This document shows, piece after piece, positions 57,810 to 63,916 of a stretch of 64,000 bases of DNA (position 1 is its first letter; the number at the start of each line of letters is the position of its first letter). This stretch comes from Mytilus trossulus. Taxonomy: Eukaryota. The position numbers and the translations under genes are program-made. The notes below the pieces were generated by a model. That model worked only from the letters and a program-made list of their open reading frames with translations. It did no database searches and had not been told where the DNA came from. The stretch covers positions 46,252,001 to 46,316,000 of the forward strand of contig NC_086374.1 of assembly GCF_036588685.1 (NCBI RefSeq), written 5' to 3'.

Positions 57810-58786
57810 GAAAAGAATGTCAATGACATAGTTGGATGAAAATTTATTAATTGTTTCATATTATTTTTTATAGCTAAAGCAGTGCTTATTTAGAAGCATT
57901 GAAAACTTTCAATGAAATCTCTATTTTTTCGTCTTTCTAGCCGATACAAATAATATGCACATTAAAATGATTTTGCTAAAAAAAAAATGTAATCTAATTC
58001 TAAAAAACAATATAACATTATATGGATATGGCAGTATTTAAAAAGATAATAGCTAAGGTGATAAGCAAATAAATTGGGTATTAAAATTAAAATCAGAATT
58101 ACATCTTAAATGATACCAGTCCACTTTTGAATAGGACATAATTTTGATTAAAACTTTACTGGCATCTACACAGACAACACATATACCAAGCATTAATAGT
58201 TTATTTATAATTTCAGGTTGTTCAAAATCATGCAGACATAAATATAGTTTTATTTTTCCTAGATTGTCAGATATTTATAGCACCATAAATCATTATGTAC
58301 ATACAACAACAACAAATGATTCTTTTAAGATAGTTTTGCTGTAATTGTTATAAGTTTCATTAGAATGATTTATATCAAAATCATCAAATTCCAAACCAAT
58401 TTTCCTTGCAAAATAACTAAATGTTGTAATGGAATCCCTTTGGAAAATAGTAAAAACAGATCCAAATAAATATATTCGTATAATCCCTATACTCTCTTCG
58501 CTTAGATTGAAAATGGAAACAAAGAATGTGTCAAAGAGTCAACAAAATATTTACTTTCAAGAAAAAAGATTTAAAAATATTAAAAAATTAATCAATATAA
58601 CTCCAATTAAGGTCACATTTACAATTTATGTTTAAAAAAAAAATTGCAGTAATCATGAACAAGAAAAACCTATGTGGTTTTTTTCACAAGAATTATCATA
58701 CTGTATGCATATGTTTATGTGTAAATGCCAGACCCATAAAAAATCTAAAATAGCTATAAAATATTGCTGCAATTTTCCAAATCCCT

Positions 58787-61700
58787 TTACAAAGCCCTCC
58801 ATTCAGAATAATTAGTTGTATCCTCTCTGGTAATGTTAGATACAATAGAATTAGGCTTTTTGTTCCTGTTTATTAGTAGTACAGCACTAGACAAATAGCC
58901 ACCAGTCTTGCTGATCTCCCAAAATCCAACCTTGTGTTTGGCATATGTAATCTTTTCATCCAGTATCTATAAAGAAAAAACATATAATTAGAACATATGC
59001 ATCTTAATATATATATAATTTATATATGTTTGTAATGATAACTATAATCCAACTTATTTTGCAAAATACTTATCTTTGTGTCACTCCTTTTCTTGGATTT
59101 CAAGGCTATTTATTTCAATACTTTTCTAATTTTCTTAATTTCTATATACAAGGGAAGAATAGAAGATCCAAATTTTACATATGACTGATAATTTATGTTA
59201 GCCTAACAGTTATAATAGAGAAAGATTCAAAATCAAAATTACTCATGAAAGTAAGTTGGTTTATAGAATTGATAATACAATGTAACAAATGAATATGAAA
59301 ACTGCTACCTGCCAATGTGTGACTTTTCTATACTTGCCTTAAACTGGACAAAGATAAAATAGCTTTAATCGAGATCTCTAAAGAATGATTGGTATATAAT
59401 GAATATATGTATAACTTGCAAGTTTGATACAGCTTCTTAATTTGATTATTTTTCATAAAAAGCTTATTAATTAGTTGTAACAATGGTTAAATAACACTTC
59501 TTCCAAAAATACAATTTTGTCTTTGTAAGAAAGTTAATATCTTTTAAAGATTTTAGCAACCATTTTTAATTTGATAAAAAATGTTATCACGTAATATCAA
59601 AAGCATTGTCAAATGTTACATGAATAAAGCCAGTACATGCAAACAACAAATAAAGTTAATGAATCAAAAAACAAATGTATTCCATGCTGTTAGATTTAAC
59701 CTTTTAATAACAACATACCATAATTCTTCCATCACCACTTTTTAAACCAAAAAAAAGGGGGGAATAAAGGTCATCAAATTTCACGGTCATTTTCAATTGG
59801 GCATGATAATACATTGTAGGTTGTGCAATTTTTCTAAATACTCAGACATACTCCTGATATGCAAGAGTATATTCGAAAAATTAAATGCTTGATGGTCTGA
59901 GTACACAGTTATTTCGTAGTGCATTTCTTTTAGACAATAAATGGAAATTTAAAAAATCCCACCAGCACTTTCTCCATAATATTTTTACAGTGTGTTGTAC
60001 TACTTTTGGGACAAATTATATCAAAATTATAGAAACTTCATCAGCTCTAATTCAAAATATGGACAATTTTATGTGAAAGGGGTCTCGAAATCTTTTGACA
60101 TCTTCCGAAATGCTAATTTTTGACCTTTTTCAACTGGACCAAATCACTACTTTACATTATAATTCATGAATCAAATTTTTGTACACTGTAGTTTTATCCC
60201 CCTTCTTGCTACTTGAGGCATAAAACATAAATAATTAAATTTGGAAAGGGTATAAAAAAAATGACAAGTAACACACTGTCCGCACTAGGGACTATATTTG
60301 TGAACAACAAAAATCAAGGGACGATAACTGTGTACTCCGACCTGATGTACAAAAGTATATGATACAGTTAGTCAAAACAAATGACAAATAACTTCAAGCT
60401 ATTAATAAATATCAATATACGAATAGAGTCAACAACAAAAATATTTTAAAATAACCTAAATAAAATTGAATTATAAAAATAAACAAGCAAATAAACAATC
60501 CAATTGTCAAATAAAGAACAATGCTATTTAAAGCCGACTGAAATTCCATCCATCTCAAAATAACATGCATAGTTAACACCGAAATTTGTTATACTACCTT
60601 TCAAGGTAAGGTGGAAATAATTTTTCGATAAAGGGTATTGCCTAGTACCAACAAGACACTGCGGATGAGATTTCCACCTGATTTTGTAAGTTCCTGACAA
60701 GTAACTTCGTGATGCAGACCATTATGGTCTAAATTATCTTGTATAGCCTGTATGGAAAAATGCTAAAGCAATTAACATTTATTCAAAGCCATGTCATATA
60801 TATAATAAAACATGTACATGTATACATCTTTTCTTGTAAATGATCAAAGAGTTTATGTATTCATTTGTTCTTGCTGCATAAAGCATTTAGTCTGATTTAG
60901 AGTTATCTCCCATTAAAACAATATTATGGAATTCTCATGTAGATTTTAAAGTTTTTAACCTTAAAAGATTAGAAAGTAATATTTTAGGATTTATACAGTA
61001 AAATTCATATTCAAACTTTTATCATATAAACTTCTTAGTACTGCAATTCTATATATAAATTTACATGTTTCTTTTATGGCCTTAAGTGTTTACACTATGT
61101 AAACTATTACATTACTAGTAAATTAGTAACAATTAATAAAATCAACATTTTATAAGATTTAAATGGATGATTACATCAATTCTGTCAGATAATAGGAAGT
61201 ACAGTTTAACAATATTTATATTTCAAATATTACATAACTTTACCAAATATCATTTCAGATTAAAATCTAAACTTGTTAACACTGTAAGAATGATAGGTGA
61301 TCAAGAGTTGAACATGATTTTTAAATGATTTTTCCCTGAGGAAGGACATGCTATTACACCTGTCCAAACAGAGGCTCAAGGTTACAAAAGGTTAGAAATA
61401 AGCACAAGCCAGCCCTAATAAGCCAGATAGTAGTATCTTATGAATGTTTATATCAAATGTTTTAGCAGTTGAGTAGAACCCACCAGAATATTTCTTTTTA
61501 GTTATTATATATGTGCAAATTATTATTTATATTAGTGTAGATGTTAACAATACAGTGTATACATATATACAATATATGTGTGTAACCTTTAACAACAAAA
61601 TCAAATGTGGTGAAAGTGTGTGATACAAATACATTAAGTTGACTAACATTTCATTAAACTTTTGAACAAAATCAATTTACCACTAATTATCTCTCAAGTT

Positions 61701-63864
61701 TTAAAATTGACATGATTTTTGCCTGTTTATTTCTTATTAAAAATCAAACAAATGTAGTTTTATCTTAATTTTTTCCATTATCTGTGTTGACAATTACCTT
61801 TAAACCAACAACTGAAGTGTTCATAACGAAATATTCATGCCTTAAAAAACTGCAATAAAAATGTGTGCATGTTTAATTTACTTTTGTAAAAACATTCTTA
61901 ACATTTTTTTCATGTAGGTTTTACAGACAATATATAATACATACACTATAACTTTTTTCACCAATTTCATCTCTGCTTCTGTGTATAAGTCTACCATTTA
62001 CATACAGCATATTAGCTGCATCATCACTGTCCAGTCTCAATATACGATACTTGTACTGTGCAAGACTCTTCATTTGCTGAAATAAAATGTGATCAGGTTT
62101 CTCCATTAACATCATTTTAATCTAATCTTAATTATATATTGAATAATACATATCTATAAGGCTTAAATCTACTTCTTGTACGTTTATACTAGTTGGTCTC
62201 CCAAAGTCGTAATTAACAACCTTTGTGTAAAATTTTAAATGCATGTACATATACAAACCAGGGGCTGATCGAGCAGCTTTTATATCTAATATTGGCCACT
62301 GGAGAAAAAAAGAACACTGACTCTCGACAAGGGGTCTTTACCATCAGGCATGTTTAAAATAAGAAAGTGAAAATCGTCTCAACAATTTAAAGGAAGGGAA
62401 TTTTTTTTACATATATGTCTAAATATAGTTGACTCCACTTAATTACATACCGCTTAGTAGTAAATAACTCAAGTTCAAGAAAGAAAAAAATATATACCTT
62501 AAATGTTAGAAGAGCTTCTTCACTACTTCCAACAGCAATTATATCCCATCCTGCCATGCTGAGCATAGATTTGAGTCTTCTAGATCCTGGTACATTTATA
62601 GGTGTCACATTGTATTCTGGGAAGGCATCAACTACAGCCTGAGCACCCTTTTCATTGGTCCTTCTACCAGTTCCAATACCAACAAATATCTCTTTTCCTG
62701 AAATATAATATTATTTTTTTTACTTTCGGACTCAAAAGCAGAAAGCAGACATTTTTTTTTACAGATTTGATATGCTTGCATAAACTGGGACAAAAAATTT
62801 GGATGTATTCATAACACATCAATAAAGAAAATTCCAATATATTGCTTAATCATGTTAATGAAACATCTATAAACATTTCTGATATACAAATGTACATGTA
62901 CAGCCAGTACAGGTGTACCTTTTCTTGATTAAATAATGTCAGTAACCCATACCTGTAAATAATACATCTCCTCCTTCCACAATCGCATCAGGATCTCTAA
63001 TCTCCACAATGGTCATTTTCATCTGACTCTGTAAATATCGTCTGATTTCACTAACCTGCAAGTATATTTTAAACATGTCAATGTAGCAGGTAAAATTGAG
63101 GGGGGGAGGGGGTATAGCAAGGTATAACCATTTGTGTAAATTCATTGGCTTACTGGTTTCTTGATGCAGTAGGGTAAAACTGTTTAGGTGTTTAGAATTG
63201 ATGAACACCTTAACAACTTATTATCTTCTTCTTCTTCCGTTTATTTTACATGTTTTAAAGCTAACTAAAATGCTATCAAAAAATAATTAACACAAAAACT
63301 TTAAAAAGGGAACAGACATAAAAGAGTATGAACAAGAATTGGAGTGAAAGTGATCTTGGGCGAACAGACCCGTATTCAGTCAACAGGGGCAAATTTTAGA
63401 GCCCTTAATACCTACTTTATAAGCCTCTGTGGACTAATCAATTATTGTCAACAGGTGCTCTCTTTCCTGATGAGTTCAAGCTAGAATTGGTACCTTTGAT
63501 CAAGCATACAGAATTTGTCACGCCCTGTTATGACTTTTAATAGGTTTTATACTAGGCTTTGGCTTACCTCTCCTTGTCTAGTTTTACTTCCAGGTCTTGT
63601 TATCAGGGCCGTATTACCAATAGCTACAACACAGTCGTCAACAAATGGACATTCTGGGTATTCTTCTGTCCCATCAAGCTCAATTGTTCTCACATCACAT
63701 TTTTTTAGAGTCTCCACAAGATCTTTGTGCTCTTTACGCGCTTTTTCCATGTCAACCTCTGCCTTGGGATCAAATTTTCTTGCACTATTCTGAAAACTGT
63801 CAGGAATTCTTACCAAGATGGCAAAATTGTATTCAAACGCGTTACATTCATATCTGTTAGACAT
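58787..63864 (-). CDS. DDAH: Dimethylarginine dimethylaminohydrolase (DDAH)-like pentein-fold protein; exons 63864-63568, 63055-62953, 62697-62498, 62076-61945, 58966-58787 (303 aa)
   Basis: GT-AG introns with phases 0,1,0,0. DDAH motifs: VDMEKARKEH, EYPECPFVDDCVV, ALITRPG..TRQGEV, EGGDVLFTGKEIFVG, RTNEKGA, LKSMLSMAG, DDAANMLYVNG, EISKTGGYLSS. Catalytic His and Cys positions are substituted (see findings). Confidence 0.9.
59894..60342. mobile_element. MITE with ~19-bp TIR and 4-bp TSD TGAT, between the two alternative DDAH last exons
   Basis: GGTCTGAGTACACAGTTAT / ATAACTGTGTACTCCGACC. TGAT at 59890-59893 and 60343-60346. Confidence 0.7.
60601..60747 (-). CDS. DDAH: Alternative last coding exon of the DDAH-like gene (isoform of 292 aa)
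   Basis: Acceptor TTTTTCCATACAG in phase 0. Open frame AIQDNLDHNGLHHEVTCQELTKSGGNLIRSVLLVLGNTLYRKIISTLP*, homologous to the distal last exon (ILDEKITYAKHKVGFWEISKTGGYLSSAVLLI...). Confidence 0.75.
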   Translation of the reverse strand, partial: AIQDNLDHNGLHHEVTCQELTKSGGNLIRSVLLVLGNTLYRKIISTLP

Positions 63865-63916
63865 TCTTGCTACTTTCACTGACAGTGGTTCAGTGCTTGA
63901 TTTTGTTGTTTCCACT

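What the first reader, a model, noticed from the sequence alone, without database searches (positions are those of the whole stretch)
58787..60747. Duplicated alternative last exons swap the nucleophile-bearing segment of the DDAH-like protein
Seen: two homologous phase-0 exons follow exon 4. The proximal one (60747-60601) reads ...ELTKSGGNLIRSVLLV...LP*; the distal one (58966-58787) reads ...EISKTGGYLSSAVLLI...EWRAL*. Both have good acceptors and open frames despite strong divergence. The canonical Cys position is Arg in one and Ser in the other. A possible donor (AAG|GTAGTA) sits 3 nt after the proximal stop, so that exon could be a 150-nt cassette spliced onto the distal exon while escaping NMD. 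Inference: splicing switches the pocket chemistry and C-terminal tail of a pseudoenzyme. I know of no such arrangement in vertebrate DDAHs.
Basis: partly seen in the sequence, partly recalled or inferred. Interest (0 to 1): 0.8.

Follow-up and report, generated by a model that had tools for sequence, protein, structure and literature searches.

The report
Two alternative tail exons, mussel DDAH-like gene
A mussel gene for a DDAH-like protein that lacks the catalytic cysteine carries two old, related versions of its last coding exon, giving two protein tails; public gene annotation already lists both forms.

Summary
A five-exon DDAH1-like gene lies on the minus strand (63864-58787). After exon 4 come two homologous phase-0 exons, 5a (60747-60601) and 5b (58966-58787). 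At the position of the human DDAH1 nucleophile Cys274, 5a has Arg and 5b has Ser.

It is not new as an annotation. Every exon translation of the window is an exact substring of two RefSeq models of Mytilus trossulus: XP_063423168.1 (isoform X1, 303 aa, 5b tail) and XP_063423169.1 (isoform X2, 292 aa, 5a tail).

Eleven mollusc isoform pairs (bivalves, gastropods, a chiton) split at this same exon border. A tree and AU test reject a mussel-specific duplication (p 0.0008).

In four laid runs, exon 4>5b is the main junction (4 of 4). The junction 61945>60747 was seen in 0 of 4. However, a 292-aa protein called on contigs of public sequencing runs, from a coruscus-like mussel, carries that junction.

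5a is therefore most likely a minor, stop-carrying cassette spliced onto 5b.

This is a new member of a known kind (tandem-duplicated alternative 3' exons). The function of the Ser/Arg swap is untested.

The parts
63568..63864 (-). Exon 1, coding part (ATG at 63864, 99 codons, phase 0 end)
   Evidence: Exact substring at residue 1 of P0277 and P0280. Pfam PF19420 E 1.9e-4, 21.2 bits, below the cut-off of 23 on its own. Joint to exon 2 in 4 of 4 runs.
62953..63055 (-). Exon 2 (103 nt)
   Evidence: Substring at residue 100 of P0277/P0280. Joints on both sides in 4 of 4 runs.
62498..62697 (-). Exon 3 (200 nt); holds ...RRLKS..., where human DDAH1 has His173
   Evidence: Alignment to 3p8p. Joints in 4 of 4 runs.
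61945..62076 (-). Exon 4 (132 nt, 44 codons), last exon common to both isoforms
   Evidence: All 11 mollusc isoform pairs diverge exactly after its equivalent.
60598..60747 (-). Exon 5a: 48 codons, TGA at 60603-60601, then 3 nt and the donor AAG|gtagta. Encodes the short tail ending ...STLP, with Arg at the Cys274 position
   Evidence: Exact tail (residues 245-292) of RefSeq isoform X2 P0277. Joint 60598>58966 in X3 and X15. Groups with the scallop 5a-type tail at 98/93 and 92/86.
58787..58966 (-). Exon 5b, coding part: 59 codons plus TAA. Long tail, Ser at the Cys274 position
   Evidence: Exact tail (residues 245-303) of RefSeq isoform X1 P0280. Joint 61945>58966 in 4 of 4 runs.
58200..58786 (-). 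3' UTR after 5b (approximate end). AATAAA hexamers start at 58254 and 58205
   Evidence: Contigs of all four runs run on from 58966 to 58400 or beyond (table 8). Hexamers found. The true poly(A) site was not determined.
60748..61944 (-). Intron between exon 4 and 5a; covered by unspliced contigs
   Evidence: table 8: X1 record 4 (60288-61962), X3 records 13 and 14, X15 record 8.
58967..60597 (-). Intron between 5a and 5b, removed in the 60598>58966 joint
   Evidence: table 5.
59894..60342 (.). Repeat element inside the 5a-5b intron, with 19-nt inverted ends (not part of the gene's coding design)
   Evidence: Inverted repeat I3, 95% complementary. Summed contig depth is in the thousands over 59896-60456 in all four runs.

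Best explanation
The last coding exon of a DDAH1-like gene was duplicated in tandem before bivalves, gastropods and chitons diverged, and both copies have been kept as alternative coding ends. In the usual mRNA, exon 4 is spliced straight to 5b, giving a 303-aa protein with Ser at the nucleophile position and a long tail. In a minor mRNA, exon 4 is spliced to 5a. 5a carries its own stop codon 3 nt before a donor and is in turn spliced onto 5b, which then serves as 3' UTR. This gives a 292-aa protein with Arg at the nucleophile position and a short ...STLP tail.

Shown here: the exons, their homology, the junctions exon 4>5b and 5a>5b, the public X1/X2 models identical to the window's exons, a protein called on a Logan contig that spans exon 4|5a, and the cross-mollusc isoform pairs.

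Inferred: that the stop so close to the last junction spares the mRNA from NMD; that the protein is a non-catalytic, ligand-binding or scaffolding DDAH-fold protein; and that the exon choice changes what its pocket can hold.
For: Exact exon-by-exon identity to XP_063423168.1 (X1) and XP_063423169.1 (X2) of Mytilus trossulus. P0284 is a 292-aa protein from Logan contigs (3 contigs, longest 1376 nt). It runs uninterrupted from exon 1 through exon 4 into 5a, which genomic DNA with its introns could not give. I could not see the contigs themselves.

Joints: exon 4>5b in 4 of 4 runs; 60598>58966 with GT..AG ends in 2 of 4 runs from two studies. No poly(A) hexamer lies within 700 nt after 5a.

All 11 of 11 isoform pairs examined share an identical core up to the exon 4 equivalent, then split into a 44-48-aa tail and a 59-69-aa tail. 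The pairs are from Mytilus (2), Pecten, Mizuhopecten, Ylistrum, Haliotis (2), Babylonia, Littorina, Physella and Liolophura.

AU test: Mytilus 5a and 5b as sisters is rejected (p 0.00084, lnL difference 26.9). All 5a-types as one clade is not rejected (p 0.448).

The 5a tails are as conserved as, or more conserved than, the 5b tails between close species: 2/47 against 10/59 for Pecten and Mizuhopecten, 2/44 against 3/61 for two Haliotis, 3/48 against 4/59 for two Mytilus.

Both tail types model confidently as the last module of the fold: pLDDT 94.1 for scallop X1 and 92.1 for the mytilid 5b form. TM-score to human DDAH1 is 0.87-0.90.
Against: The junction 61945>60747 was seen in 0 of 4 laid runs. 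The contigs that hold 5a run on unspliced into the upstream intron (X1 record 4, X3 record 13, X15 record 8). In those samples 5a-bearing RNA is therefore mostly partly processed, and the mature 5a mRNA is rare or absent.

The 5a>5b joints have a short side (28 letters) and were laid at 90% likeness, a class the tool warns about. The runs are only guessed to be RNA, and contigs cannot give ratios.

M. californianus has only the 303-aa form in the cluster. I could not see what evidence RefSeq used for X2.

The mussel 5a sits on a long branch relative to the scallop's (0.96 against 0.14), so constraint may be relaxed in mussels. No protein-level or biochemical evidence exists for either isoform.
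Confidence: 0.85

Rival explanations
1. 5a is included only as low-level splicing noise or as a regulatory, unproductive exon. Under this reading its inclusion serves to lower output of the 303-aa protein, and the 292-aa protein has no function of its own.
For: No exon 4>5a joint in 0 of 4 runs, and 5a-bearing contigs are unspliced upstream. In the P0151 cluster, 3 Logan contigs carry the 292-aa form against 15 for the 5b form (7+7+1). Contig counts are not expression levels.
Against: Conservation is at the amino-acid level: the same stop position and ...STLP end in mussels, scallops, abalones and a chiton. Close species differ little in 5a: 2/47, 2/44 and 3/48. The tail models confidently as part of the fold. 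A purely regulatory exon would not need any of this.
Confidence: 0.1
2. 5a is a true alternative last exon with its own polyadenylation site, and the 5a>5b joint is a by-product.
For: The protein databases only show that the protein ends in 5a, not how the mRNA ends. X1 record 4 runs unspliced through the 60598 donor to 60288.
Against: No AATAAA or ATTAAA between 60600 and 59900. The joint 60598>58966 occurs in two runs. The X1 contig ends at the border of a high-copy repeat, which would break any contig there.
Confidence: 0.1
3. 5a is a dead relic in mussels, and the X2 models and the Logan protein are artefacts.
For: Long branch of the mussel 5a. The M. coruscus model P0185 fuses 33 residues of 5a in frame to 5b through an internal GT that no laid run supports (0 of 4). 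This shows that models of this locus can be wrong.
Against: Open frame, acceptor, stop and donor are all intact in the window. The frame is open with only 3 of 48 changes in a coruscus-like mussel. The 5a donor is in use. A 292-aa uninterrupted ORF on a 1376-nt contig cannot arise from unspliced DNA.
Confidence: 0.05

Closest known systems
RefSeq models XP_063423168.1 / XP_063423169.1 (Mytilus trossulus DDAH1-like isoforms X1 / X2), with like pairs in 9 further mollusc species
   Same: Identical, exon by exon, to the window's translations. X1 ends in 5b and X2 ends in 5a.
   Different: These are automatic models. No paper that I could find describes the pair, the homology of the two exons or their age.
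Tandem-duplicated exon substitution / mutually exclusive exons (PMC9741552, PMC8373072: search listing and start of abstract only; PMC9013439: passages read)
   Same: Adjacent homologous exons of like size and phase. [quoted passage not shown] The event is ancient and conserved.
   Different: The pair is at the 3' end of the coding region. Exclusivity is reached through a stop codon in 5a, not by exclusion at the RNA level, since 5a is spliced onto 5b.
Mutually exclusive duplicated terminal exons of Drosophila pip and the 3' variable regions of PGRP-LC (as named in PMC9013439, passages)
   Same: Tandemly duplicated homologous 3'-terminal exons are chosen alternatively.
   Different: I saw only two passages of that paper. 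Here there are just two versions. No competing RNA structure was found: the local fold around the 5a donor has z -0.26.
Human DDAH1 (PDB 3i2e, 6szq, 3p8p)
   Same: Same fold and clear homology: E 1.7e-45 for P0277, TM-score 0.87-0.90 for the scallop 5a-type model.
   Different: The nucleophile Cys274 is Ser (5b) or Arg (5a), and His173 is Arg in Mytilus. No such exon pair showed up for vertebrates among the proteins returned here, but I did not search for one.
Non-catalytic DDAH-fold proteins: T. brucei RESC5 (PDB 8dpk; PMC9980740) and vertebrate DDAH2 (PMC10256801); both papers seen as search listing and start of abstract only
   Same: DDAH fold used without DDAH activity. RESC5 is a structural hit of the model at rank 24, E 3.7e-17.
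   Different: RESC5 shows 17% identity in that alignment, and I did not test descent. In the amphibian DDAH2 rows returned here, a Cys stands at the same place in the tail by my own by-eye register.

Membership tests
DDAH family (Pfam PF19420 DDAH_eukar; amidinotransferase-type fold) | Significant sequence match to the family | tested here: met
   Exon 1 alone scores E 1.9e-4 at 21.2 bits, under the cut-off of 23, and the other exons alone give nothing. The public protein P0277, whose sequence holds every window exon, hits human DDAH1 chains at E 1.7e-45. Precomputed Pfam for the cluster representative P0151 lists PF19420 and PF02274.
DDAH family (Pfam PF19420 DDAH_eukar; amidinotransferase-type fold) | DDAH fold | tested here: met
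   The models are of relatives, not of the window's joined product: scallop X1 pLDDT 94.1, mytilid 5b form pLDDT 92.1. Only the scallop X1 model was searched: Foldseek top hits are human DDAH1, TM-score 0.87-0.90.
Active DDAH enzyme | Nucleophile Cys (human Cys274) | tested here: not met
   Ser in 5b. Arg in 5a, by one-residue ungapped extension of the alignment.
Active DDAH enzyme | Catalytic His (human His173) | tested here: not met
   ...RRLKS... aligns with ...LHLKS.... The residue numbering is recalled; the C274S label comes from the 3p8p title.
Active DDAH enzyme | Hydrolysis of methylarginines | not testable with these tools
   Needs an enzyme assay.
Tandem-duplicated alternative exons | Adjacent homologous exons, same phase, similar length | tested here: met
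   Lengths are 147 and 180 nt with stops, both phase 0, 1.6 kb apart. BLASTP E 4e-6.
Tandem-duplicated alternative exons | Transcripts that code for one or the other version | tested here: met
   X1/X2 models and the Logan-contig proteins P0282 (5b) and P0284 (5a). In my own four runs only the 5b junction was seen with exon 4.
Tandem-duplicated alternative exons | Strict mutual exclusion in the mRNA | tested here: not met
   5a is spliced onto 5b (60598>58966) in 2 of 4 runs. Exclusion is at the protein level, through the 5a stop.
Tandem-duplicated alternative exons | Conservation of both versions across species | tested here: met
   11 of 11 pairs. Trees and AU test.
Alternative last exon with its own poly(A) site | Poly(A) signal after the proximal exon | tested here: not met
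   No AATAAA or ATTAAA in 60600-59900. This is a weak test, since variant signals exist.

The most novel reading that the evidence does not exclude
The exon choice is a conserved two-state switch of a ligand-sensing DDAH-fold pseudoenzyme, more than 500 million years old. The age is my own dating of the bivalve, gastropod and chiton split, not tested here. In this reading the 5b form (Ser at the nucleophile site) keeps an open arginine-type pocket and binds methylarginine-like ligands without hydrolysing them. The 5a form places an Arg side chain at the nucleophile site; by my by-eye register this Arg is present in mussels, abalones, Babylonia and Littorina. The Arg would act as a built-in pseudo-substrate that closes the pocket, and the short ...STLP tail would replace the long tail used for a partner.
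Probability: 0.12. Interest if true: 0.7.

Novelty: new member of a known kind. Interest (0 to 1): 0.4.

Why it matters
On its own this is a correct reading of a gene whose two isoforms are already in RefSeq, so it adds little as an annotation. The comparison across species adds two points.

First, the two tail exons are homologous copies kept side by side in bivalves, gastropods and a chiton. This makes them an old, well-conserved case of a tandem-duplicated exon substitution, and an unusual one: it sits at the coding 3' end and works through a stop codon placed 3 nt before a donor.

Second, the swapped segment is the strand that carries the catalytic cysteine in real DDAH enzymes. By my by-eye register, 5b tails have Ser there in 23 of 25 rows. 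5a tails have Arg in 6 of 11 rows, Asn in 3, and Ala and Ser in one each. The gene therefore offers a natural pair of variants for asking what a cysteine-less DDAH-fold protein does in protostomes.

Tried and rejected
Exon-by-exon Pfam and PDB searches gave nothing for exons 2 and 3, 5a and 5b, and only a chance-level Tic110 match (E 0.14) for exon 4; these pieces are too short.

The search with the exon 4|5a part of the M. coruscus model P0185 returned only P0185 itself. The whole-protein search with P0151 showed no 292-aa Mytilus form. Both at first looked like evidence against 5a use in mussels. One search showed that they were blanks of the method: the isoforms sit as members inside one 90% cluster.

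The internal donor used by model P0185 (TTG|gtacta inside 5a) has no joint in 0 of 4 runs, so I rejected it as a model artefact.

A hairpin within 5a next to its donor (inverted repeat I7) is no more stable than shuffles (z -0.26). I found no support for an RNA-structure switch, and without orthologous DNA covariation could not be tested.

DNA alignment of the two exon regions shows no similarity beyond the coding part.

The scan of metagenome contigs with 5a found no relative; I did not use the second scan that was allowed.

A bacterial promoter and terminator scan was a wasted call on a eukaryotic gene, and I make no use of it.

A search of the own genome with a Cys-bearing Lottia DDAH (P0187) matched only this gene. 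This hints that the mussel has no canonical DDAH, but the tool scores only the best candidates, so it is a hint only.

The trees rest on 59-60 columns, and their backbone is poorly resolved. I chose the rows: 41 and 53 of the proteins in hand. They comprise all 5a-type tails, their partners, other mollusc 5b-type proteins, a sample of other protostome rows and five Cys-bearing DDAHs. The remaining distant hits were left out.

I read no supplements. The evidence behind the RefSeq models may lie in records that I could not see.
Full report
THE GENE. The window is AT-rich eukaryotic DNA with no N. On the minus strand lies a five-exon gene:
- exon 1: 63864-63568 (ATG, 99 codons)
- exon 2: 63055-62953
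- exon 3: 62697-62498
- exon 4: 62076-61945
- 5a: 60747-60601 (48 codons plus TGA)
- 5b: 58966-58787 (59 codons plus TAA)

All borders have AG acceptors behind pyrimidine-rich stretches, and GT donors. Three bases after the 5a stop stands AAG|gtagta. Each was handled apart, and the joined step was left out.

5a and 5b are homologous (13 of 35 identical, E 4e-6). Each has a single copy in the 1.30-Gb genome. Alone, the short exon peptides find nothing in Pfam or the PDB, except exon 1 (PF19420, E 1.9e-4, under the cut-off) and a chance-level Tic110 match for exon 4 (E 0.14).

THE GENE AND BOTH ISOFORMS ARE ALREADY IN PUBLIC ANNOTATION. A search with exon 1 against 1.84 billion representatives gave 735 relatives at E up to 0.001. 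One was a Tegillarca protein, P0010, which I then used as a full-length query. That search listed mollusc 'DDAH1-like' proteins, several of them as isoform pairs.

The members of the 90% cluster of P0151 include these:
- XP_063423168.1, isoform X1 of Mytilus trossulus, 303 aa (P0280)
- XP_063423169.1, isoform X2 of Mytilus trossulus, 292 aa (P0277)
- an X1/X2 pair filed under further Mytilus records (P0275, P0276)
- M. californianus, with the 303-aa form only (P0279)
- Logan-contig proteins of 303 aa (P0281 and P0282, 7 contigs each)
- a Logan-contig protein of 292 aa (P0284, 3 contigs, longest 1376 nt)

A script showed that every window exon translation is an exact substring of the two M. trossulus models. 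Exons 1-4 sit at offsets 1, 100, 135 and 201 of both, 5b at 245 of P0280, and 5a at 245 of P0277. No other entry matches all exons, so the window is most likely M. trossulus.

Two earlier searches had shown no 5a-type Mytilus protein. That was a blank of the method, because the isoforms are members of a cluster and not representatives.

RNA EVIDENCE OF MY OWN. The data are Logan contigs of X1, X3, X9 and X15, from four studies and three organism codes. Their kind is only guessed to be RNA, but the GT..AG joints show spliced RNA.
- The joints exon 1>2, 2>3 and 3>4 are in 4 of 4 runs, and so is 61945>58966 (exon 4>5b).
Its shorter side is 28 letters, which the tool flags as weaker. That length is what a contig built from 31-letter words gives at a fork, and the main joint has side 30 in three of the four runs (132 in X9).
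- The joint 61945>60747 is in 0 of 4 runs.
- The contigs that hold 5a run on unspliced into the upstream intron: X1 record 4 (60288-61962), X3 record 13 (60598-61079), X15 record 8 (60598-61752).
- Contigs lie over most of the exon 4-5b intron in X1, X3 and X15. Almost none lie in introns 1-3 of X1 and X3.

In these samples 5a is therefore seen mainly in partly processed RNA, and the mature 5a mRNA is rare. Contigs drop rare variants, so this does not show absence.

P0284 gives the missing junction from other runs. Its uninterrupted 292-aa frame from exon 1 through exon 4 into 5a cannot come from unspliced DNA. It belongs to a coruscus-like mussel: 2 of 244 core changes and 3 of 48 changes in 5a against the window.

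No AATAAA or ATTAAA lies in the 700 nt after the 5a stop, whereas three AATAAA lie after 5b. Together with the 5a>5b joint, this makes 5a a stop-carrying cassette rather than a terminal exon with its own 3' end.

That a stop 3 nt before the last junction avoids NMD follows from the 50-55-nt rule known from mammals. Whether the rule holds in molluscs is not known to me.

AGE. Eleven isoform pairs were compared: two Mytilus, Pecten, Mizuhopecten, Ylistrum, two Haliotis, Babylonia, Littorina, Physella and the chiton Liolophura. In all 11, the two products are identical up to the equivalent of exon 4. They then split into a 44-48-aa tail and a 59-69-aa tail.

The short tails resemble 5a. Most end in ...STLP or a near variant, as 5a does. 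The long tails resemble 5b.

In trees of the tail segments, the window's 5a joins the scallop short tail at 98/93 and at 92/86 with more rows. No species' short tail is sister to its own long tail. The backbone is weak, as expected for 59-60 columns. The AU test rejects Mytilus 5a and 5b as one clade (p 0.00084). It does not reject all short tails as one clade (p 0.448).

The duplication thus predates at least the split of bivalves and gastropods, and by the chiton pair probably the molluscan classes.

In the annelid and nemertean rows that I looked at, the tail is short and of the ...STL(Q/D) or ...TTAQ kind. The nemertean Lineus has a separate pair of isoforms that differ over both the exon 4 and exon 5 equivalents.

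CONSTRAINT. Changes between close species, as 5a-type tail, 5b-type tail and shared core:
- Pecten and Mizuhopecten: 2/47, 10/59, 16/237
- two Haliotis: 2/44, 3/61, 20/237
- two Mytilus: 3/48, 4/59, 2/244

So 5a is kept at the protein level. In mussels both tails change faster than the core, and the mussel 5a sits on a long branch (0.96 against 0.14 for the scallop).

THE PROTEIN. P0277 and P0151 match human DDAH1 chains at E 1.7e-45 and E 1e-47. Models of the scallop 5a-type isoform and of a mytilid 5b-type protein are confident (pLDDT 94.1 and 92.1). Both show the same order of helices and strands in the last module, and the extreme tails are of low confidence.

At the place of Cys274 (labelled by the C274S variant 3p8p), 5b has Ser. 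The scallop short tail has Asn. The mussel 5a has Arg, by one-residue extension of the alignment. His173 is Arg in Mytilus.

I also read the rows by eye, in the register of the hydrophobic strand that follows:
- 5b-type tails: Ser in 23 of 25 rows, Gly in 1, Asn in 1.
- 5a-type tails: Arg in 6 of 11 rows (two Mytilus, two Haliotis, Babylonia, Littorina), Asn in 3 scallops, Ala in Physella, Ser in the chiton.

Lottia, Patella and Babylonia also have a separate Cys-bearing DDAH (P0187, P0219, P0192). In the mussel genome a search with P0187 found only the present gene, which is a hint and not proof of loss.

The protein is thus a member of the DDAH fold family by descent, but it fails the catalytic features of the enzyme. 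What it binds or does is unknown. The Ser/Arg switch of the pocket is an inference.

WHAT IS KNOWN. Tandem-duplicated exons used alternatively are a known kind. I saw PMC9741552 and PMC8373072 as search listings and starts of abstracts only. I read passages of PMC9013439, which also names duplicated, mutually exclusive terminal exons in Drosophila pip.

Four searches found no paper on mollusc DDAH isoforms. The library lacks most subscription journals, and I read no supplements.

My alignments agree with it.

VERDICT. The case is a new, well-conserved member of a known kind, and its isoforms are already in RefSeq. I therefore could not test whether the stop-then-donor layout is conserved in other molluscs.

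Noticed in passing
window 59894-60342 (high depth to about 60456): A roughly 450-bp element with 19-nt inverted ends (95% complementary) sits in the 5a-5b intron. Summed contig depth there is in the thousands in all four runs, and many contigs break at it. It looks like a high-copy MITE-like repeat.
   Followed up: partly
P0232 / P0233 (Lineus longissimus isoforms X4 / X1): The two nemertean isoforms, both 276 aa, are identical up to about residue 186. They then differ by homologous sequence over the equivalents of both exon 4 and exon 5. This looks like a separate duplication of the 3' part of the same gene family.
   Followed up: no
own genome G000, search with P0187: A Cys-bearing canonical DDAH of Lottia matched only the present gene in the 1.3-Gb genome. 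Lottia, Patella and Babylonia have both kinds. The mussel may lack a canonical DDAH, but the tool scores only the best candidates.
   Followed up: partly
P0185 (Mytilus coruscus model); window 60649/60648: A public M. coruscus model fuses the first 33 residues of 5a in frame to 5b through a GT inside 5a, and also lacks most of exon 3. No laid run shows that joint (0 of 4). It is probably a gene-model artefact.
   Followed up: yes
window 63865-63915 and beyond 64000: Several Logan-contig proteins (P0283, P0285-P0287) start 17 residues upstream of the ATG. The window has GTG at that codon, so this is probably a start chosen by the gene caller. The X3 contig with exons 1-4 runs 246 letters past the window's end, so the 5' UTR is not wholly in the window.
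   Followed up: no
Insect and nematode rows (for example P0188, P0236, P0195-P0208): By eye, many protostome DDAH-like proteins outside molluscs also lack a Cys in the register of human Cys274 (Ser in the insect rows). The cysteine-less form may be a wide protostome clade rather than a mollusc oddity.
   Followed up: no
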